This document shows positions 7,380 to 36,424 of a stretch of 41,073 nt of DNA, piece by piece. How positions within the stretch are numbered: the first letter of the stretch is position 1; each line of letters starts with the position of its first letter. Origin of the DNA: Octopus bimaculoides (Eukaryota); contig NC_068996.1 in assembly GCF_001194135.2 (NCBI RefSeq), positions 27,923,258 through 27,964,330 on the forward strand, written 5' to 3'. Below the pieces are notes generated by a model. It saw only the letters and a list, made by a program, of their open reading frames with translations. It was not told where the DNA came from and did no database searches. The translations under genes were made by a program, and so were the position numbers.

Positions 7380-7690
7380 GGGTGCCTCACCATGGTTGCT
7401 TGTCCTGTAAGAAAGAGTAGTTTGATCTCCCTCAAATCACACTCTACTATCTTTAAAAGAACAGATAGACATATTAGATAATATAAACTATGTCTCACAT
7501 GGTGAAACGGCCATAGAATGCTTTTGATTTTAGCTCTGAAATCTGGAAGTCATTTAAGCGCAATCAGAGTTATAACTATTTCATTGTTGGTAACTAATGT
7601 CAATAACGCTGAGCAGTGGTTGTTCTGATAATAGAATAAGCAATTAAATCTCCTTCAAATCACACCATACTGTCTTAAAAAGAGAATATA
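7380..7690 (+). repeat. Interspersed repeat family G (gctagaaatagc.gccaaat.tccctcaaatcacac.ctac..tcttaaa), two partial copies
   Basis: Same motif at about 55-105, 6388-6425 and 34978-35030 (+), and at 37670-37830 and 39180-39230 (-). Class unknown. Confidence 0.6.
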
Positions 7691-7691
7691 T

Positions 7692-8298
7692 NNNNNNNNN
7701 NNNNNNNNNNNNNNNNNNNNNNNNNNNNNNNNNNNNNNNNNNNNNNNNNNNNNNNNNNNNNNNNNNNNNNNNNNNNNNNNNNNNNNNNNNNNNNNNNNNN
7801 NNNNNNNNNNNNNNNNNNNNNNNNNNNNNNNNNNNNNNNNNNNNNNNNNNNNNNNNNNNNNNNNNNNNNNNNNNNNNNNNNNNNNNNNNNNNNNNNNNNN
7901 NNNNNNNNNNNNNNNNNNNNNNNNNNNNNNNNNNNNNNNNNNNNNNNNNNNNNNNNNNNNNNNNNNNNNNNNNNNNNNNNNNNNNNNNNNNNNNNNNNNN
8001 NNNNNNNNNNNNNNNNNNNNNNNNNNNNNNNNNNNNNNNNNNNNNNNNNNNNNNNNNNNNNNNNNNNNNNNNNNNNNNNNNNNNNNNNNNNNNNNNNNNN
8101 NNNNNNNNNNNNNNNNNNNNNNNNNNNNNNNNNNNNNNNNNNNNNNNNNNNNNNNNNNNNNNNNNNNNNNNNNNNNNNNNNNNNNNNNNNNNNNNNNNNN
8201 NNNNNNNNNNNNNNNNNNNNNNNNNNNNNNNNNNNNNNNNNNNNNNNNNNNNNNNNNNNNNNNNNNNNNNNNNNNNNNNNNNNNNNNNNNNNNNNNNN
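7692..8298. other. Assembly gap (largest of 8: 1606-1705, 7692-8298, 10510-10571, 12886-12895, 14583-14862, 16797-16806, 22131-22140, 40219-40692)
   Basis: Runs of N. Confidence 1.
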
Positions 8299-9190
8299 GA
8301 CCTTGTCTACAGAATTCATATTTTTCCTGTCCAAATGATTTTGAAGACTGTGAAATAAACGATAATCAGATGGAGCAATGCAGCAATTATGGTGGGTGGG
8401 GCATCGTTTCCCATTCAAACTGCTTGTATGTAACTGAGCATTATCTTGATGAAAGAACATCTTTCGTGTTGAAACCAAAGATGGTTGTTTTTCTTCTAGT
8501 GCTGACTTAAGCCACTCAAGCTGCTTGCTGTAGATCTTCTTTGTTATCGTTTGGTTTGGGTTTAAAAGTTCAAAGTGGACTAAACCTTTCATATCTCATC
8601 AAACAGATAACAACACCTTAAATGGGTGAAGACCTTCTTTAACCTGAGGTGCTGGTGTTTCCCCTTTTCCATTCACTGTCTTTTTTTATAGAGAACCCAT
8701 TTCTTGTCACCACGGCAGCAAAGAAGAGCAGACATTCACTCTGTGTGTGATTAGACTCAGAAACTTTGTGAGGAGCCCATTGACCCAATTTACTGACTTT
8801 TCCAATAGCATACAGGTGTCGTTGAATGGTTGAATGACCAAATCCAAGTTTTTCTGCAAGTTCCTCAACAGTTATGATAGGATTTTGTTCCACCAGGGTT
8901 TGCAGGACATCTTCATTGAGTTCTACAGATCTTTCATGACAAGGTTCATCTTCTAGGCTGTTCTTTTTGACTCAGAATTTCTGGAACCACCATTGACACT
9001 GGCTTATGTTTATTGTCCAATCCCCATATACTGCATTAATATTCCTTGCATTTTCCATTGCATTGTTGCTTTTATTGAACTTATAAAGCAAAATATGCTG
9101 AATATGCTCCTTTGTCTCTTTCATTATAGCTTTGAAAAAGTAACTGTTAAAATTGAACTGCACTCTTCAAAACTTGAACTAAGAATAAGC
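8299..9190 (-). mobile_element. Degenerate mariner transposase fragment (runs into assembly gap)
   Basis: ORF pieces KEHIQHILLYKFNKSNNA..ARNINAVYG (HTH), GKVSKLGQWAPHK, FHQDNAQLH and IAPSDYRLFHSLQNHL are typical mariner motifs. Confidence 0.9.
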
Positions 9191-9264
9191 ATAAGGTAAA
9201 ATTACTACCTGCTTTTATAGGATGTTGATGCAGGTAGTTTATCCCATTCCCCTCCCGACTATTA

Positions 9265-9470
9265 AACCTTTCTTGGAGTGATTGGCTGAGAGGAGAAACT
9301 CTTATAGACTCTGTGTACATGTGTATGCTTCTGTACACATGCATGTGTGTATGTGCATGCATGTTCATGTCTATGATGCTTTAGGGTTTGTTCCCACTAT
9401 GAAGATGTTGTTGGCTAGTGTCAGCCATGAGTTGAACAATGCCTTGTCTGTGTGGTGTGTCCAAATATAT
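9265..9470 (+). repeat. ~205-bp direct repeat, second copy at 11023-11228
   Basis: cctttcttgg.gtgattggctg.gaggagaaactcttata..gatgttgttggctagtgtcagccatgagttgaacaatgccttgtctgtgtg.tgtgtcca occurs twice, about 1.76 kb apart. Confidence 0.85.
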
Positions 9471-9535
9471 ATACTTACAATTGAAAAAAACTACATCATT
9501 TATTCATGGGATGACCCAGTATTTCCAGTATTTAT

Positions 9536-9745
9536 GTGTGTGTCTTTGTGTTTGTCCCCCCACATACACACCATCACTTGACAACCGATGTTGGTGTATT
9601 TACGTCCCATAACTTGGTTTGGCAAAAGAACCGATAGAATAAGTACTAGGCTTACAAAGAATAAGTGCTGGGGTTGATTTGTTCAACTAAAGCCCTGGTG
9701 CTCCAGCAGAGCTGCTGTCAAATGGCTGAAGCAAGCAAAAGAATA
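9536..9745 (+). mobile_element. SINE family C, 3' half
   Basis: gtgtttgtcccccc..cacttgacaaccgatgttggtg..ggcaaaagaaccgatagaataagtactaggc matches 27130-27340. Confidence 0.8.
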
Positions 9746-9790
9746 TATATGTACACACACACACACACATGTATGCGGTTCCTATATATA

Positions 9791-9856
<66 letters not shown>

Positions 9857-10157
9857 CAACATACACAGTATAAATTTGTATTGTTTTTGATTCTTTGTCC
9901 GAAGAATTACAGATAGGTAATTCTATACATGTTTTTTCTAAATGTATATCTTTAACACCTATCCTATAATGAAACATGTATAACATGGAATTCTTCTTAA
10001 CAGCTTGATAAATTGTGAATTAAATTAATATTCCAACCAGGAAACCCTGAGTAGCTATATTTCACAAGGCTTCTTGTTTCTGTTATATCTTCACTCTCTT
10101 AACTGATTGAGTGCTATACTTGTTGAAACTTACTACACTGTATATGTGTGTGTGTGT

Positions 10158-10485
10158 ATCATCATCATTGTTTAAGTCCACTTTCCATGCTGGCATGGGT
10201 TTGACTGAGGACTGGTGAGGCAGAGGCTGCACCAGGCTCAATCTTGTCTGACAAAGTTTCTACAGCTGGATGCCTTTCCTAATGCCAACCACTCTGAGAG
10301 TGTAGTGGTTGCTTTTTACGTGCCACCGTTACACAAGGGCCAGTCAGGCGGTTCTAGCAATGACCACACTCATGCTCAAAAGGTGTTTTTACGTGCTACC
10401 TGCATGGGATCCAGTCCAGCGGCACTGGCAATGACCACGCTCGAATGTTGTTTTTCATGTGCCACCGGCGATGGTCACGCTTGGA
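10158..10485 (-). mobile_element. RTE 3'-end copy
   Basis: Same tail family as 40028-40218, extending further into the 3'UTR. Confidence 0.85.
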
Positions 10486-11221
10486 TATATATATATATAT
10501 ATATATATANNNNNNNNNNNNNNNNNNNNNNNNNNNNNNNNNNNNNNNNNNNNNNNNNNNNNNNNNNNNNNTATAGTCATTATTTTCAAAGCATGTTTAA
10601 GAATAACACCAGAACATTTACTGATGGTGTGACTCTATACCCATGATAGTTAAATTTATTTTGAAGATCCAGTTGGCCGGAGCTTCATTATATATATAAC
10701 TATGCTATTTTGGTACATTATGCACATAACCAAGAGAGGATAGTGATGCCCAGAATACCTTTGATCATAAGTTTGCTTTATTGACAGCTAACCTAGGGCT
10801 AATAAAGAAAGAAACAACTACTACTTCAACATTACTCTAACACTATCGAGGATTGCGTGTACCCTCTAAAAGGATTTGGGCACAGCAATACATACACGTA
10901 CACATACATACATGCACACACACACACACATATGTATAAAATCAAGGCATGCTAAGCAGTGATGATAAGAATAAAGTTGTGTACATTTATATTTGAAGTG
11001 CTTGTGTACACCCAAATGTAGAAAGACCTTTCTTGGGGTGATTGGCTGGGAGGAGAAACTCTTATAGGACTCTGTGTGTATGTGTTTGCCTCTGTACACA
11101 TACATGTGTGTATGTGCATGCATGTTCATGTGTATGATGGTTTAGGGTTTATTCCCATTATGAGGATGTTGTTGGCTAGTGTCAGCCATGAGTTGAACAA
11201 TGCCTTGTCTGTGTGATGTGT

Positions 11222-11263
<42 letters not shown>

Positions 11264-11264
11264 A

Positions 11265-11458
11265 CATCATCATCATCATCATCATCGTTTAACGTCCGCT
11301 TTCCATGCTAGCATGGGTTGGACGATTTGACTGAGGACTGGTGCAACCGGATGGCTACACCAGGCTCCAATCTAATTTGGCAGAGTTTCTACAGCTGGAT
11401 GCCCTTCCTAACGCCAACCACTCAGAGAGTGTAGTGGGTGCTTTTACGTGTCACCCGC
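11265..11458 (-). mobile_element. RTE 3'-end copy (young, close to 40028-40218)
   Basis: Near-identical to 40028-40218 with (CAT)n on the + strand. Confidence 0.88.
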
Positions 11459-11542
11459 ATGCACATACATACATATATACATACATAGGGACAAAGTGTT
11501 TGGGATAGTGTACAGGATAGTATAATGTTAACTTTATTTAAC

Positions 11543-11613
<71 letters not shown>

Positions 11614-11668
11614 ATATGAATTAGAAGCAGGTTGAGGAATATAAACAATATTGAACACACATATACAA

Positions 11669-11904
11669 AGTATGTGATTCGCTAGTTTGTGGGTAGGCTG
11701 CGTTATAGGCGTAAGAGAATAAATTCTCATCAATTCATTTGGTGTTAAAACACCTGGAAGTCATAGGCAAACGAGAAAACTTGTATCCGGTCTCATCTCG
11801 CTTGTCTATGACTTACAAGTGTTTTAGCACCAGGTGAATTGATGAGAATATATTATTTCATGCCTATAAATGCAACCTACCTACAAACTAGCAAAACACA
11901 TACT
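11669..11904. repeat. 236-bp palindromic (hairpin) element, MITE-like
   Basis: Arms 11669-11776 and 11796-11904 are reverse complements (roughly 80% by eye), with a 19-nt loop. Confidence 0.8.
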
Positions 11905-11929
11905 CTCTGTATGTATGTGTGTGTGTGTG

Positions 11930-11996
<67 letters not shown>

Positions 11997-12274
11997 TGTT
12001 TGTTGAACATTTATTTTTTCATGGTAGCATAGGTTAGTTGGGCAGGTATATGAAGCAGCATTTTATGGCCAGATGCCCTTCCTGTTGCCATTCCTTAACT
12101 GCCTTTTCAAGAAAGAGACTGTTTTTCCATTTGGTCATTGAAAGTGCAGAGTGACCAGTTTGGATATCAACAAAGAATGTAAACATCATATCACTATTTC
12201 ATTCAGATAGTGACAAGCAAAACTGTGGAAATTCAGTATTCATGTTCAAACATGTGCAACAAGCAAGCATATAC

Positions 12275-12620
12275 ATCAGGGCTGTGTGTGATAAGAAGCT
12301 TTTTTCTCAACCAAATGGTTCCAGGTCCAGTCTCATTGCACGGCCTTGTGAGTGGGCTCACAGCCTGTTGTATGCACATTCACCCACACACATATATGTA
12401 TATATATTTATGTATCTGCGTCTGTGTTTGTCCCTCACCACTGATTGACAACTTATGATGGTGTGTTTATGTCCCTGCAACTTAGTGGTTTGGCAAAAGA
12501 GACCAATAGAATAAATACTAGGCTTAAACAAAATAAGTCCTAAGATGAATTTGTTTGATTATAACCTTCAAGGTGGTGCCCCAGCATGACTGCAGCCAAA
12601 TGACTGAAAAGAGTAAAAGG
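12275..12620 (+). mobile_element. SINE family C copy
   Basis: Head ggctgtgtg..aagaagcttt..atggttccagg plus the same 3' half as 9536-9745. Confidence 0.78.
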
Positions 12621-12650
12621 CAAAGCACACACACACACACATGCACACGC

Positions 12651-12686
<36 letters not shown>

Positions 12687-23253: not shown

Positions 23254-24482
23254 GTAAGTGCACTAAGAAATCATTATATGTTGTTGTTATTGTTGTTATC
23301 ATCATTGTGTTATTCACCTGTTAATGTTTTCCAGACTGTCTCCAAGTTTGAAACGTTTATTCTGGAAATATGTGTTTTATTGCAACTGTTATAACTGCCA
23401 TTTCTTGTTTTCACCAAAAGAGACCAAAAGAGTCAAGTTGGCAGACATGTGCATACATTGTCTCTCTCTCTCTCTCTCTCACAAACAGTCTGTTAAATCA
23501 CAAAAGTTATTTTATACTCTTACCTTAATCATTCCGGTCTCCTCGCTTTATTCTCAAAACTATATCTGATATAAAGAATATTCACTGATTTCATGATGCT
23601 GGTGCTGAATATGACATTGATAAAGAAAGTCTCTGATAATTATGTGAAAGCTTGGGGTGGAAGTAATAACTTCCTGTATTAAGTATGTGTATGTATGCGT
23701 GTGCATGTACACACATGTAGGCAGGCAGGCAGGCAGGCTCACTCACATGTAGATTTAGAAATGTAAACAAGAAAAAGAGTACTTGATACAGGCAGTATTT
23801 ATTTATTGGTACTAAGTCAATTTATTTCACAGATACTACTTGGAATTTTATGCAGGAGATATTCATTCAGGTTGTCTAGAAAAGTTAAAAGCAAGTTGGT
23901 GGACAGAATTCATACAAATTCCTGACTGTCGTTGGCTAGAGGTCAGGTTATGAACTTCAGTGCCTTCTATTAGGGTTGTTAGTAGTCAAGAGATAATTAA
24001 TACTTATTGTGTACAGTGCAGTTTTCTAAGATCGAAAGGTGGACACTCTAACTAAAATCCAGTGGCAAATAGCATGCTCATAATTACATCTTTATAATAA
24101 AGTTTTGCCATAGGTACAGTGGCTCAAAATTTTCCCCTTTTTATTCAGCGATTATAGTTCTTGGATTGGAATGTAAAATTATTCCAATATATACAGCTCG
24201 CATATAATTGTCCCTTTGGTATAGTGAGGTACTGTATTTAGATATGACTTCCCCTGTATACAAATTCACATACATAGCATTACTTTACACAAAATATATT
24301 TCCTTATTTGCTCCTGTTTTCTAATATATTGCTTTTTATTACTGCCTTGTACACTATTCAAAGGTTATTTATCTTAGGGTAGTGGAAGAAAACAATGCCA
24401 TTTTATATTTCTAATGAAGTTAGAATAATTTTCTGTTGTTTATAAACACATTGCAAATATGATACTTCATTGGCAAACATGG

Positions 24483-28090: not shown

Positions 28091-28455
28091 GACCAGTCAC
28101 TTTGCATTAAAACACCTTGTGTAGTATTTGTTCTTCCCTGGCTAAGAAATCCCTTGTCACTCTAGCCATCATAAATACAGTGAACCAGTGATTTGGCTCT
28201 TGTAAGCCTGTAACCAATCACATTGTTATTCACAAAACATGACATAAAGAAAAATATTTTTAAAAAATGATAAATACCATTTGTCTTTGGTTAGCATGGG
28301 AAAATCAAAATTTAAAAAAAAAATGAATAAAGGTACACATAGAAGAATTGTTTGCATATGTATATGTGTGGATGTGTGATGGATATTTAGTTGTATATTG
28401 TATTTAGTTATATTTGTATTTAGTTGTATTTGTAACATGGTGTTGTATTTTTCAG

Positions 28456-28596
28456 GATCTCCAGTGAAAGGAATTAGTGCTGCTAGTGTTGATAGTGAGG
28501 GTACAAACAAAAACGTCAGAGAAGCTACACCTGTTGTACATTCACTGGCGAAATTGGTAATTTCTGGAGGAGAAGGATACATTGATTTTCGTACTG
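28456..28596 (+). CDS. MAPK8IP3: JIP3/JIP4 penultimate coding exon (141 nt, phase 1-1)
   Basis: Acceptor gtatttttcag and donor gtcagt. Translates (G)SPVKGISAASVDSEGTNKNVREATPVVHSLAKLVISGGEGYIDFRT(G); LV.SGGEGYIDFR is a JIP3/JIP4 motif. Lies within ORF 28398..28748. Confidence 0.95.
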
Positions 28597-29362
28597 GTCA
28601 GTTTTGTTTTATTTATTTCACCACTCACCAACACCAATTACCACTGCCAACCACCATTACCATGAACCATCATCATTTTTCCAAGTCCATGAGTTTCTTT
28701 TTATATAAATGTTATGCTCCAGTGCTTCTAGTGGCACACTGTTGTTAAATAATCAAAAGAAAAAGTAATAAAGACCAAACTGGTTCTCTAAATAATGTAT
28801 GTTATCATTGCTTCTTAATCTCCTGTGAGACTCAGTACTATATAAGACTGAATCTAGTCCTAAGATGCACAATATCATGAAACTAATGTTAAACCTGTTT
28901 ACATTCATTTTTGAATCATTACAAGACTGAGCTTGAATTTTCAACAGGATGTTATGGGTTAACTAAGTTCCTGGTTATTCCCTCTAGTTCAAAGGGTAGT
29001 GCTGAACAGACCAGGAGTCATTGTCAAACTTTCATTAATAATAATAAAAATTATTATAATAGCAATTGAGAAACCAAAATAAATAAATCAATTGTTATAG
29101 AATACCTCAACACTAAGAATATTCTCTTTGAAATGAGTGGAATCATTAACTTTTAATATTAATAATAAATCTACATAACCTTTCAATCTAACCATGACCT
29201 AATTTAGGAATTATATTTCACTTCACCCACCACATTTAGTAGAAGTGAACCCTAAGTCAAGATTCCTACAACTATTAGTAGTACGACCTCTACCTCCCAT
29301 AAAACACTTTATTCACTCAGTTTGCTGATTCTTTCAGTTTTACTTTGAAATGGCAAAGGGTA

Positions 29363-29448
29363 AGGACTCTGACGAAACTGCACCGACCATGATGCTAGGT
29401 TGCATATACAAGTGTGCAATTGCTGCAGTTGAAACATGTGTAGGTCCT
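29363..29448 (+). ncRNA. Type I hammerhead ribozyme motif (minimal, Penelope/retrozyme style) in the last JIP3 intron
   Basis: Stem I aggact(29363-68)/ggtcct(29443-48); core CTGACGA(29369-75); stem II aactgca(29376-82)/tgcagtt(29424-30); GAAA(29431-34); short stem III AC..GT around atgt; NUH triplet GTA(29440-42). All invariant core nucleotides are present. Confidence 0.8.
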
Positions 29449-30470
29449 ATAAAGATACTGTAAATAACTGTTAAATAAAATTATGGATGTGAAAAATCTC
29501 TGTTCTCCCTATCATTATTAATACTATTACTTTCTCTACGGAAAATATGCAGTCCAGAACAGGACACTCAGATTTACCCAGCAAGAATAGTTACCAGAGC
29601 CTAGCAACTTATTGTTAGCTTGGGTATCACATAAGGACCATTGTGGTTAGCCTACATCTGAAACTGATTTAAGAGGAAACATGGTAACTGCCAGGATAAT
29701 ATATCCCTTTAAACACATCTTATATATAGATATTCACTATACTTTGATTTTATATACACACATTTATATATACACATTTATATATAGGTATATTGATGCA
29801 AACAGGAAAAATAGAACTTAAAATATTAGTCTCTGTATATTTTTATTAATATTTAGCAGAAATAACAAAGTGATTCAAGGTCTGAGAGTTTCATGCATTG
29901 ATGCTTATCAAACTAGTTACAGGTCAAAAGGCAGTGAGTTACAGGTCAAAAGGCAGTAGGTTTATTATGTAGGACAGGTGGGGATTCAGTCAACCACACA
30001 CCTGTATTAAGCAGCAAATAAGCAGAGTTGCTAAAGTATAGATTATCTTGCAGAGTTTGTTCAAATCTTGCTGAGGTCAACTTTGCTTTACATTCTTTTA
30101 ATCTGGATAAAGTACTAGTCTTTCACTAGATCAATTCTTCTTCCTTACTCTCTCTTTCACTCTCTCACTCTTCTCTGCTCTCTTTCTCTTTCCATCTCAC
30201 TTTATCTTTCTGAAAAAGATTGGCTGTATTTAGACCTGGAGATGGATAGGTTCTTCCAGGTCTAAAAAATGTTCAAGACAGACCATATATCATGATCATA
30301 CCTCTAGGACTACATCAGGAATTGAAGACCCAACACAACACACTTTTGCATTATTAAAAAAAAACAAAAAAAATGTTAAAACATTGCTTGTCTTGTGAAA
30401 AGAAAAATATATGTTTGTGTTAAATATTGTTATTTTTGTACTATATTAGTATAATTTTTTAAATTTGTAG

Positions 30471-30577
30471 GTGATGGAGAAGAAGATGATTCAAACCAAG
30501 ATGAGGCAAAGAAAAGTTGCTTAAACCGAGGTGAACGCAGCCATCTGATTGTTTGGCAGGTTACTTGTCCTGATTAA
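30471..30577 (+). CDS. MAPK8IP3: JIP3/JIP4 terminal coding exon to TAA stop
   Basis: Acceptor aaatttgtag. Translates (G)DGEEDDSNQDEAKKSCLNRGERSHLIVWQVTCPD*; ERSH.IVWQV is the conserved JIP3/JIP4 C-terminus. Confidence 0.95.
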
Positions 30578-35186: not shown

Positions 35187-36424
35187 AAGGCAGTGAGCTG
35201 GCAGGATTGTTAGCCCCTCACACAAAATGCTTAGCAGCATTTGATCCGTCTTTATGTTCTGAGTTCAAATTTTGCCAGGGTCAGCTTTGCCTTTCATTCT
35301 TTTGGAGTCAATAAATTAAGTACCAGTGAAGCACTGGTGTTATGTAATTGACTGGTCCCCTCCTGCAAAATTTCAGGTCTTGTGCCTTTAGTAGAAAGGA
35401 TTCTTCTTCTTATTTAAGAAGGGAGCAAGTTAGCAGAATCGTTAGCACGCTGGGCGAAATGCTTAGCGGTATTTCGTCTGCCGCTACGTTCTGAGTTCAA
35501 AATTCGCCGAGGTCGACTTTGCCTTTCATCTTTTCGCGGTCAATTAAATAAATACCACTTATGCACTGGGGGCAATATAATCGACTTAATCCATTTGTCT
35601 GTCCTTGCTTGTCCCCTCTGTGTGTAGCTCCTTGTAGGCAGTAAAGAAATAACAATTGTTAGCATGCCAGACAAAATGCTTAGCAGTATTTCATATGTTC
35701 TGAGTTCAAATTCCACTGAGGTTGACTTTGCTTTTCATCCTTTCAGAGTCAATAAAATAAACCTTCTAAGCACAGGGGTCGATGTAATCAACTAACCCCC
35801 TCCCCCAAATTTCAGGCCTTATGCCTCGGGCTTTTAGCAGAATCATTAGAGTGTCATTGTGGACAATTATGTCTTTCATCTTTTTGGGGTTGATGAAATA
35901 AATACCAGCTATGTACAGAAATCAATGTAATCAACTAGCTCCCGTCTCCCAAAATTTCAGGCCTTGTTCCTATAGTAGAAAGGGTTATTGTTATTAAGGT
36001 GGTGTACTGCCAAGATTGTTAACACATCGGACAAAATACTTAGCTGCATTTTGCCCATCATTATGTTCTGAATTCAAATTCTGCCAGGGTCAACTTTGCC
36101 TTTCATCCTCTTGAGGTTGATAAATTAAGTACCAGTTGAATACTGGGTTGATGTAATCGACTATCCCCCTTACCCAAATTTCAGGCCTTGTGTCTATAAT
36201 AGAAAGGATTATTATTATTATTTAAGAAGGTGGTCAGCTGATTAAATCATTAGCTCACTGGACAAAATGCTTAGTGGCATTTCACCTATCTATATGTTCT
36301 GGGTTCAAATTCTGCCAAGGTTGATTTTGCCTTTCATGCTTTTGGGGTCAATAAAATAAGTACCAGTTAAGTACTGGGGTCGATGTAATCGATTGGTTCC
36401 TTCCCCCAAATTTCAGGCCTTGTA
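35187..36424 (+). mobile_element. Head-to-tail array of six tRNA-derived SINE copies (family A)
   Basis: Copies start at about 35187, 35420, 35653, 35832, 35996 and 36222. Most carry ggcagtgagctggcagaat.gttagc..aaatgcttagc..gttctgagttcaaatt..gactttgcctttcatcc..gataaattaagtaccag (copy 3 is 5'-truncated, copy 4 internally deleted). Confidence 0.9.

What the first reader, a model, noticed from the sequence alone, without database searches (positions are those of the whole stretch)
29363..29448. Complete hammerhead ribozyme core on the sense strand of the last JIP3 intron
Seen: stem I aggact/ggtcct, CUGACGA, 7-bp stem II (aactgca/tgcagtt) closing a 41-nt insert that can itself fold, GAAA, minimal stem III and a GUA cleavage triplet (predicted cut after 29442). 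The stem III region ACATGTGT is quasi-palindromic (ACACGTGT after reversing one CpG decay) and could form an 8-bp intermolecular helix. Known: minimal type I hammerheads with palindromic helix III occur in Penelope-like elements and animal retrozymes and cleave best as dimers; intronic hammerheads are known in amniote genes such as RECK. Inferred: this motif is transcribed with every JIP3 pre-mRNA between the last two exons, so cleavage could compete with splicing of the terminal exon of a neuronal transport adaptor. Weak points: A-U at 10.1-11.1, G-U at 1.1-2.1, and only one copy locally.
Basis: partly seen in the sequence, partly recalled or inferred. Interest (0 to 1): 0.85.

Follow-up and report, generated by a model that had tools for sequence, protein, structure and literature searches.

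The report
Relic transposon hammerhead ribozyme in intron
The motif is a genuine hammerhead-ribozyme sequence, but it is an old, slightly decayed, single copy of a repeated retrotransposon-type element sitting in the last coding intron of a JIP3/JIP4 gene, and nothing found here suggests it cuts the gene's RNA.

Summary
Window 29363-29448 (+) holds a complete type I hammerhead: 6-bp stem I, CUGACGA, 7-bp stem II with a 41-nt insert, GAAA, a 2-bp helix III inside ACAUGUGU, and GUA with the cut after 29442. It is the only such motif in the window. None as good appeared in 82 Mb of simulated sequence.

It is not a private feature of this gene. It belongs to a ~500-bp repeat copy (~29215-29714) with a few dozen genomic relatives at 80% identity or more. 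Read depth rises toward the 3' end, and copies end beside TA repeats. Most relatives carry the canonical states that this copy has lost: C2.1, CUGAUGA and the ACACGUGU palindrome.

The insertion is shared with at least two, probably three, related species at flank-like divergence.

No partner ribozyme exists in the 41 kb. Helix III barely forms in a monomer. No RNA ends or circular joints were seen, although RNA coverage was far too low to test this.

Verdict: an ordinary relic of a Penelope-like or retrozyme-type element. A role in JIP3 processing is unsupported.

The parts
29363..29448 (+). Type I hammerhead ribozyme motif, whole
   Evidence: Read. It is the only descriptor hit in the window, with about 0.001 or fewer expected by chance.
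29363..29368 (+). Stem I, 5' strand (AGGACU). U2.1 at 29368 is C in about two thirds of related copies.
   Evidence: T>C in 39 of 58 reads.
29369..29375 (+). Core C3 U4 G5 A6 C7 G8 A9. N7 at 29373 is U in about 63% of related copies.
   Evidence: No listed variant at 8% or more at C3-A6 or A9 (8 rows of the table were not shown). G8>A in about 13% of copies.
29376..29430 (+). Helix II: 7 bp (29376-82 with 29424-30) closing a 41-nt insert (29383-29423) that forms its own hairpin
   Evidence: pair probability about 0.6. Most family variation lies in the insert.
29431..29442 (+). G12 A13 A14, then the quasi-palindrome ACAUGUGU (helix III plus loop 3), then A17. The predicted cut is after 29442.
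   Evidence: Monomer helix III pair probability is 0.005. The self-duplex is -6.0 kcal/mol against -10.3 for the family form ACACGUGU.
29443..29448 (+). Stem I, 3' strand (GGUCCU)
   Evidence: Pair probabilities are 0.72-1.0 for five of the six pairs and 0.23 for the junction pair G1.1-U2.1.
29215..29714 (+). 5'-truncated copy of the multi-copy repeat that carries the hammerhead. The boundaries are approximate.
   Evidence: DNA read depth at >=80% identity is 0-2 at 29150-29200, about 13 from 29218, 24-38 over the hammerhead and 47-58 at 29575-29640. Paralogue similarity ends at 29713/29714 (loose ends).
29720..29790 (.). TA-rich microsatellite directly 3' of the element. TTATAT occurs at both edges (29211-29216 and 29720-29725).
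   Evidence: Other copies also run into (TA)n (loose ends at 29527 and 29713).
28597..30470 (+). Last coding intron of the JIP3/JIP4-family gene (1874 nt, GT..AG)
28456..28596 (+). Penultimate coding exon (..SPVKGISAAS..LVISGGEGYIDFRTG)
30471..30577 (+). Last coding exon (GDGEEDD..GERSHLIVWQVTCPD, stop TAA at 30575-30577)

Best explanation
The motif is the hammerhead ribozyme of an old, 5'-truncated copy (~29215-29714) of a retroelement. The element resembles the pseudo-LTR of a Penelope-like element, or a non-autonomous derivative of one (a non-LTR retrozyme or SINE-like element).

In the parent element (inferred from the literature), two such ribozymes pair through the palindromic helix III ACACGUGU. 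They do this in tandem copies or between transcripts. The active dimer cuts after GUA, releasing unit-length RNA with 5'-OH and 2',3'-cyclic phosphate ends for reverse transcription.

This copy landed in sense orientation beside a TA-rich tract in the last coding intron of a JIP3/JIP4-family gene, before the split of at least two, probably three, related species. It has since drifted. It keeps every catalytic-core base. It has lost C2.1, which is now a G-U pair, and the central C-G of the helix III palindrome. It has no partner motif.

It is transcribed passively as intron RNA. It is predicted to be inert or nearly so, and to be removed with the intron.

Shown here: the motif, the repeat family, the decay direction, the shared insertion and the intron context. 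Inferred: the parent element class, the dimer mechanism and the inactivity of this copy.
For: The motif is real and far beyond chance.

Repeat family:
- Genomic reads at >=80% identity pile up 13- to 58-fold over 29218-29650, against 0-2 in the flank at 29150-29200.
- Depth rises toward the 3' end, as expected for 5'-truncated retrocopies.
- Roughly 100 reads from three runs cover the hammerhead. All are under 95% alike, which marks an old family.

The majority of family copies restore canonical features:
- 29368 C gives G1.1-C2.1.
- 29373 T gives CUGAUGA.
- 29437 C (44%) and 29438 A (31%) are the two decay products of a CpG in ACACGUGU.
- No listed variant at 8% or more falls in C3-A6, A9, GAAA or GUA.

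Copies whose hammerhead is too diverged to align still read TTGAAAC(A/G)CGTGTAGGTC in loose-end consensuses.

Other copies end at (TA)n, and some contigs show inverted head-to-head pieces. Such complex tandem/inverted insertion structures and a microsatellite insertion bias are described for Penelope-like elements (PMC8557442).

The architecture matches published invertebrate and Penelope-like hammerheads (PMC4209133, PMC7229834): type I, a large 7-bp helix II, and a 2-bp helix III capped by a palindromic tetraloop. Those papers also report that most such motifs occur as single copies from truncated elements, and that single motifs do not detectably cleave.

Orthologous presence:
- A 792-nt RNA contig of organism C bridges the single-copy flank (from 28871) into the element up to 29378, with 25 differences.
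- Further contigs of organisms B, C and D cover the rest at about 95-98% identity.

Weak fold:
- The hammerhead-constrained fold is 2.8 kcal/mol above the minimum free energy structure.
- It is not adopted in the 221-nt context.
- Helix III pair probability is 0.005.

There is no partner motif in the 41 kb. An RNA(?) contig of X1 runs uncut across 29302-29651. There are no end piles or back-joints in three raw RNA runs.
Against: No reverse transcriptase or GIY-YIG reading frame was linked to this family, in the window or elsewhere. The Penelope-like assignment therefore rests on architecture and insertion habits.

Two features reported as typical of Penelope-like minimal hammerheads are absent even in the family consensus: G10.1-C11.1 (here A-U) and an unpaired base between A9 and 10.1. 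The 41-nt insert in helix II is also unusual.

The catalytic core is fully intact after long neutral drift, and the insertion has been kept in several species. That is compatible with, though not evidence for, some retained role.

Inactivity is predicted, not measured. The RNA data held no read >=95% identical to the locus in the sampled 6% of three runs, so cleavage at 29442/29443 was not really tested.
Confidence: 0.8

Rival explanations
1. The motif is an exapted intronic ribozyme. The hammerhead is still active, perhaps with protein help or by pairing in trans with other family transcripts. It cuts the JIP3/JIP4 pre-mRNA in the last intron and tunes production of the terminal exon. This is the first reader's reading, analogous to the amniote RECK/CTCL intronic hammerheads.
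For: All core bases are intact and stems I and II are good. It lies in sense orientation in the intron. The insertion is retained in at least two, probably three, other species. In organism B there is at most 1 difference in 80 nt of the hammerhead, against 4 in 97 nt downstream, which is not significant. In vertebrates retrozymes are reported to be depleted from introns (abstract of 10.64898/2026.07.22.740005), so a retained sense copy is mildly unusual.
Against: Divergence in organism C is flank-like and includes a stem II change, 29429 T>C, seen in two runs. This copy has moved away from the family's canonical states. Monomer helix III is essentially unformed and there is no partner in 41 kb. 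Rfam HH9, HH10 and Hammerhead_1 give nothing even at E<=10. An uncut contig spans the site. Single minimal hammerheads of this class showed no detectable cleavage in vitro (PMC4209133).
Confidence: 0.05
2. The motif arose by chance. Random AT-rich intron sequence happens to satisfy a loose hammerhead pattern.
For: Rfam models do not recognise it. Fold z-scores are unremarkable at -1.1 and -0.3. Helix III is only 2 bp and 10.1-11.1 is A-U.
Against: About 0.001 or fewer such motifs are expected per window. The segment belongs to a repeat family whose majority sequence is a better hammerhead than this copy. Chance cannot explain that.
Confidence: 0.02
3. The locus is a live retrozyme. It is an active non-LTR retrozyme that produces self-cleaved circular RNA.
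For: It is a type I hammerhead with a palindromic helix III, as in animal retrozymes (PMC7229834). Family members are transcribed at a low level on both strands.
Against: There is no tandem repeat and no second hammerhead. No back-joints were seen and only tens of family reads per ~1.8 Gb of RNA reads, whereas retrozyme circRNAs are described as highly expressed. Family copies are 10-20% diverged.
Confidence: 0.03

Closest known systems
Minimal type I hammerheads in the pseudo-LTRs of Penelope-like elements (Cervera & De la Pena 2014, PMC4209133; Craig et al. 2021, PMC8557442)
   Same: Both are type I topology with a long helix II (7 bp; 7-8 bp reported). Both have a very short helix III with palindromic 15.x-16.x positions suited to dimer formation. 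Both occur genome-wide, mostly as single motifs in truncated copies with high sequence heterogeneity. Copies sit next to (TA)n, and inverted adjacent pieces occur.
   Different: This one has A10.1-U11.1 instead of the highly conserved G10.1-C11.1. It has no unpaired base after A9. It has a 41-nt insert inside helix II, and stem I is 6 bp rather than 4-5. No RT/GIY-YIG reading frame was tied to the family here.
Animal non-LTR retrozymes (Cervera & De la Pena 2020, PMC7229834; bioRxiv 10.64898/2026.07.22.740005)
   Same: The hammerhead style is invertebrate-type: a 2-bp helix III capped by a tetraloop. The host sequence has low GC. These elements probably derive from Penelope-like pseudo-LTRs.
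   Different: Retrozymes are tandem 170-400-bp units, each with a ribozyme, and are expressed as abundant circular RNAs. This locus is a single unit with no circular joints and almost no RNA.
Conserved intronic hammerheads of amniotes (HH9/HH10 in RECK, CTCL; De la Pena & Garcia-Robles 2010, cited in PMC7229834)
   Same: A hammerhead on the sense strand of an intron of a protein-coding gene, shared between species.
   Different: The amniote motifs are ultraconserved, have stable helices and loop-loop contacts, and are single-copy. This one is a member of a decayed repeat family, has flank-like divergence, and gives no match to the Rfam HH9/HH10 models.
Schistosoma Sm-alpha / newt satellite 2 hammerheads (own knowledge; mentioned in PMC4209133 and PMC7229834)
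   Same: These are repeat-borne type I hammerheads. The weak helix III makes cleavage depend on dimers.
   Different: Those families are very abundant, tandem or SINE-organised, and transcribed. The family here has only a few dozen recognisable copies.

Membership tests
Hammerhead ribozyme (type I) | Conserved core: C3 U4 G5 A6 N7 G8 A9, G12 A13 A14, A15.1-U16.1, H17 not G | tested here: met
   CUGACGA at 29369-75, GAAA at 29431-34, U16.1 at 29441 and A17 at 29442.
Hammerhead ribozyme (type I) | Three helices around the core, with stem I open-ended | tested here: met
   Stem I is 6 bp, stem II is 7 bp, and helix III is 2 bp plus a tetraloop. Helix III has pair probability 0.005 as a monomer.
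Hammerhead ribozyme (type I) | G10.1-C11.1 pair at the base of helix II | tested here: not met
   A29376-U29430. No listed variant at 29376 and only ~6% T>A at 29430 among family copies, so this is a family trait and not a decay of this copy.
Hammerhead ribozyme (type I) | Match to Rfam covariance models (Hammerhead_1, _3, HH9, HH10, _II) | tested here: not met
   No match at gathering score or at E<=10 on 601-nt and 102-nt stretches. The likely cause is the 41-nt helix II insert and the minimal helix III (inference).
Hammerhead ribozyme (type I) | Self-cleavage 3' of H17, giving 2',3'-cyclic phosphate and 5'-OH ends | not testable with these tools
   Only indirect data. There is no end pile at 29442/3, but no read >=95% identical to the locus was sampled.
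Penelope-like element pseudo-LTR hammerhead | Sits in direct repeats flanking an RT plus GIY-YIG reading frame | tested here: inconclusive
   The window copy is truncated at ~29215 with single-copy DNA upstream. No RT-like ORF is evident among the window's ORFs: the ORF list was read, but only a handful of ORFs were scanned against Pfam. Full-length relatives could not be fetched with these tools.
Penelope-like element pseudo-LTR hammerhead | Palindromic 15.2-16.2 / loop 3, allowing a dimeric helix III | tested here: met
   The family form is ACACGUGU, with a self-duplex of -10.3 kcal/mol. The window copy ACAUGUGU gives -6.0.
Penelope-like element pseudo-LTR hammerhead | Multi-copy and 5'-truncated, with microsatellite-adjacent, tandem or inverted insertions | tested here: met
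   There is a 5'-to-3' depth gradient. (TA)n follows the copy ends. Inverted head-to-head pieces occur in contigs. No tandem was seen.
Penelope-like element pseudo-LTR hammerhead | Unpaired nucleotide between A9 and 10.1 | tested here: not met
   Helix II pairs flush with A9 and G12.
Animal non-LTR retrozyme | Tandem repeats of 170-400 bp, each with a hammerhead | tested here: not met
   One motif only. There is no repeat of the unit in the window.
Animal non-LTR retrozyme | Abundant circular RNA of unit length | tested here: not met
   No back-joints and only tens of family reads in 3 x ~1.8 Gb of RNA reads. Only about 6% of each run was sampled.
Amniote-type conserved intronic hammerhead (HH9/HH10) | Stronger conservation than the surrounding intron, and single copy | tested here: not met
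   It is multi-copy. In organism C there are 1-5 differences in 86 nt, against about 5% in the flanks. For organism B the difference is not significant.

The most novel reading that the evidence does not exclude
The relic is not dead. Its core has stayed intact and the insertion has been kept in several octopus species. It might therefore still cleave conditionally, through trans-dimers with other family transcripts or with chaperone help. That would give a co-transcriptional cut in the last intron and lower the yield of the conserved C-terminal exon of a neuronal transport adaptor. It would be an invertebrate counterpart of the amniote intronic hammerheads.
Probability: 0.04. Interest if true: 0.7.

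Novelty: new member of a known kind. Interest (0 to 1): 0.2.

Why it matters
This locus matters little on its own. Repeat-borne minimal hammerheads are known to litter invertebrate genomes, mostly as single dead copies.

It does add a cephalopod example. I found no paper on cephalopod hammerheads in the held library. The family has an unusual helix II, with a 41-nt insert and A10.1-U11.1.

It also offers a clean natural test case. This is a sense-strand, core-intact motif fixed in an intron of an essential neuronal gene across species. If it were shown to cleave, it would bear on whether transposon ribozymes get recruited into mRNA processing outside amniotes.

Tried and rejected
- Rfam scans of the whole window at gathering score, then 601-nt and 102-nt stretches at E<=10, found no hammerhead hit. 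The only match was a spurious snR33 hit at E = 4.
- My first IUPAC pattern allowed too short a helix II span and missed the site. Its 3 hits elsewhere matched the chance expectation.
- Two simulation scripts timed out before a faster one worked.
It cost one call. I defined the exons instead by tblastn with a C-terminal JIP4 sequence recalled from memory. That was a lead only, later confirmed by the database search and by reading the splice sites.
- The PDB sequence search with the exon products found nothing.
- I first read the depth fall on both sides of the hammerhead as 'the ribozyme is the best-conserved block'. Comparison shows it is an edge effect of the short stretch, so I dropped that claim.
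- I did not try to link the family to an RT/GIY-YIG reading frame. No tool holds this genome, and no Penelope-like protein is encoded in the window to seed a search.

Full report
**1. Is the motif there?**

Yes. Reading 29200-29620 gives the following on the + strand.
- Stem I: AGGACT 29363-29368 pairs with GGTCCT 29443-29448 (6 bp, with a G-U pair next to the core).
- Core: CTGACGA at 29369-29375.
- Helix II: AACTGCA 29376-29382 pairs with TGCAGTT 29424-29430 (7 bp, A-U at 10.1-11.1). It closes a 41-nt insert.
- GAAA at 29431-29434.
- ACATGTGT at 29434-29441, which as a monomer gives A15.1-U16.1 and C15.2-G16.2 capped by a tetraloop.
- A17 at 29442, so the predicted cut is between 29442 and 29443.

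A descriptor I wrote finds this site and nothing else on either strand of the 41 kb. It requires stem I >=5 bp, helix II >=4 bp and helix III >=2 bp, and allows G-U pairs. In 41 Mb of first-order Markov sequence with the window's composition, scanned on both strands, it found one relaxed hit and none with I>=6 and II>=5. The expectation per window is therefore about 0.001 or less.

A much looser scan (3-bp stems, U3/A8 variants, optional bulge) gives only trivial hits elsewhere. blastn finds no second copy of the surrounding sequence in the window.

Rfam does not see the motif at all. I attribute this to the long helix II insert and the minimal helix III, but that is an inference. It counts as a failed membership test for the Rfam models, not for the ribozyme class.

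**2. Where does it sit?**

I ran tblastn with a JIP4 C-terminal sequence recalled from memory, used only as a lead. It picks out + strand exons at about 205-321, about 23080-23258, about 28434-28601 and 30476-30562.

Reading the junctions gives:
- a penultimate coding exon at 28456-28596 (..LVISGGEGYIDFRTG);
- a GT..AG intron at 28597-30470 (1874 nt);
- a last coding exon at 30471-30577 (GDGEEDD..GERSHLIVWQVTCPD, stop TAA at 30575).

The joined product hits Pfam WD40_2. Its best named database relatives are 'C-Jun-amino-terminal kinase-interacting protein 3' and '...4', with E-values down to 6e-58.

The cut site is 846 nt from the 5' splice site and 1028 nt from the 3' splice site.

**3. It is part of a repeat family.**

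I laid raw genomic reads of the same species on 29150-29650 at >=80% identity. Depth runs as follows:
- 0-2 at 29150-29200, the single-copy level for that sample;
- about 13 from 29218;
- 24-38 across the hammerhead;
- 47-58 at 29575-29640.

Most reads are under 90% alike. Three genomic runs laid on the motif alone give about 100 reads, all under 95% alike. This points to a few dozen recognisable relatives, old and diverged. Abundance rises toward the 3' end, as in 5'-truncated retrocopies.

Paralogue similarity stops at 29713/29714 (loose ends). The window copy is followed by a TA-rich tract at 29720-29790. Other copies run straight into (TA)n or (TG)n (loose ends at 29527 and 29713). Some contigs join two pieces head to head on opposite strands.

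These are the habits described for Penelope-like elements: 5' truncation, microsatellite targets, and inverted or tandem partial copies (PMC8557442). A recent octopus repeat annotation reports a Penelope-like expansion at Jukes-Cantor distance of about 0.2 (PMC13282606). That is in line with the 10-20% divergence seen here, although this link is an inference.

**4. The family sequence is a better hammerhead than this copy.**

Among the related reads:
- 29368 is C in about two thirds, which turns the G1.1-U2.1 wobble into G-C.
- 29373 is T in about 63%, giving the textbook CUGAUGA.
- 29437 is C in 44% and 29438 is A in 31%.

No listed variant at 8% or more falls in C3-A6, A9, GAAA or G16.2-U16.1-A17 (eight rows of the table were not shown). 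G8 is A in about 13% of copies. Most variation lies in the helix II insert.

Copies whose ribozyme half is too diverged to align still show TTGAAAC(A/G)CGTGTAGGTC in the loose-end consensuses.

A10.1-U11.1 is a family trait and not a lesion of this copy.

I withdrew one tempting argument. The depth fall on both sides of the motif is an edge effect of the short stretch, as comparison shows.

**5. Orthologues.**

Transcriptome contigs from three other coded species carry near-identical sequence.
- In organism C, a 792-nt contig runs from the single-copy flank at 28871 into the element up to 29378, with 25 differences. A second contig covers 29381-29750.
- Organism B has a contig over 29369-29545 with 5 differences.
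- Organism D has one over 29437-29666.

So the insertion predates the split of these species.

Divergence inside the 86 nt is not visibly lower than outside.
- Organism C has 29429 T>C in helix II, seen in two runs. It also has up to four unresolved mismatches beside a reproducible contig break at 29378-29383.
- Organism B has at most one change in 80 nt, against four in the next 97 nt. That difference is not significant.

All examined orthologues share the decayed T at 29437. Presence therefore shows age, not constraint.

**6. Would this copy work?**

For the 86 nt folded alone:
- stem I has pair probability 0.72-1.0, except the junction G-U pair at 0.23;
- helix II has about 0.6;
- helix III has 0.005;
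- the hammerhead-constrained fold (-20.9 kcal/mol) lies 2.8 kcal/mol above the minimum free energy fold.

In a 221-nt context the minimum free energy fold is a different structure. Shuffle z-scores are -1.1 and -0.3.

The helix III self-duplex needed for a dimer is -6.0 kcal/mol here, against -10.3 for the family form. No second motif exists in the 41 kb to pair with.

Published tests of this class found no detectable cleavage for single motifs and low cleavage for dimers (PMC4209133). Salamander motifs with similarly weak helix III cleave efficiently only as dimers (PMC7229834).

**7. RNA evidence.**

Contigs from run X1, labelled 'RNA?', cover the intron at depth 2-3. One runs uncut over 29302-29651.

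Three raw RNA-seq runs were sampled at about 6% each. They gave no read >=95% identical to the locus and only tens of family reads, on both strands. They showed no pile of ends at 29442/29443 and no back-joints.

This is consistent with an inert relic and argues against an abundant circular retrozyme RNA. It is far too thin to exclude cleavage of the intron.

**8. Verdict.**

The functional idea is not supported.

The best explanation (about 0.8) is a passively transcribed, slightly decayed, single hammerhead from an old 5'-truncated retroelement of Penelope-like or retrozyme type. Whether the parent was an autonomous element's pseudo-LTR or a non-autonomous derivative is open, because no reverse transcriptase frame could be linked.

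The rivals are:
- an exapted ribozyme acting on JIP3/JIP4 RNA (about 0.05);
- a live retrozyme (about 0.03);
- chance (about 0.02).

It is a new member of a known kind, and interest is low (0.2). The one feature worth a specialist's glance is the family's odd helix II, together with the fact that a core-intact, sense-strand copy is fixed in an intron of a conserved neuronal gene.

Noticed in passing
window 7675-8893 (-) and 16046-16494 (+): There are relics of mariner-type DNA transposons. Two ORF fragments match Pfam PF01359 Transposase_1 (E = 2e-9 and 5e-19). The first copy is interrupted by an assembly gap (a run of N).
   Followed up: partly
window 30059-30100 and 29740-29927: Two other short repeats lie in the same intron and are extremely abundant in RNA contigs. 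Word depth reaches about 20,000 for 30069-30115 and about 5,000 for 29740-29786. Many diverged copies exist, and related pieces occur elsewhere in the window (about 1713-1788, 2153-2228, 35263-35303). They are probably SINE-like or microsatellite-associated elements. Neither was identified.
   Followed up: no
window 29456-29527: The ~70 nt just 3' of the hammerhead has much higher contig word depth than the rest of the element (8,000-16,000 against ~2,000), and many copies end at 29527 in (TA)n. Raw-read depth does not show this peak. It may be a short, very abundant sub-element or an artefact of contig depth.
   Followed up: partly
window 29378-29383 in organism C contigs (runs X28, X29): Contigs from two independent samples of a related species break at the same place, inside the 5' strand of helix II, with unlisted mismatches beside the break. 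The same species has 29429 T>C on the opposite strand. A compensatory change at 29377 is possible but could not be read.
   Followed up: partly
window 29211-29216 and 29720-29725: TTATAT occurs at both edges of the repeat copy. It could be a target-site duplication in a TA-rich target. About 5 extra bases (29715-29719) lie between the end of family similarity and the second TTATAT.
   Followed up: no
window 29218-29250: An 8-bp inverted repeat, TTCACTTC...GAAGTGAA, sits at the 5' edge of the repeat copy. A separate, uniformly diverged paralogue of 29215-29282 is transcribed in all three RNA runs.
   Followed up: no
window 29907-29957: There is a local tandem duplication of about 24 nt (gttacaggtcaaaaggcagt, twice) inside the intron.
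   Followed up: no
whole window: The window has many (TA)n, (CA)n and (GA)n microsatellites and several runs of N (1553 N in all). GC content is about 0.2-0.43.
   Followed up: no
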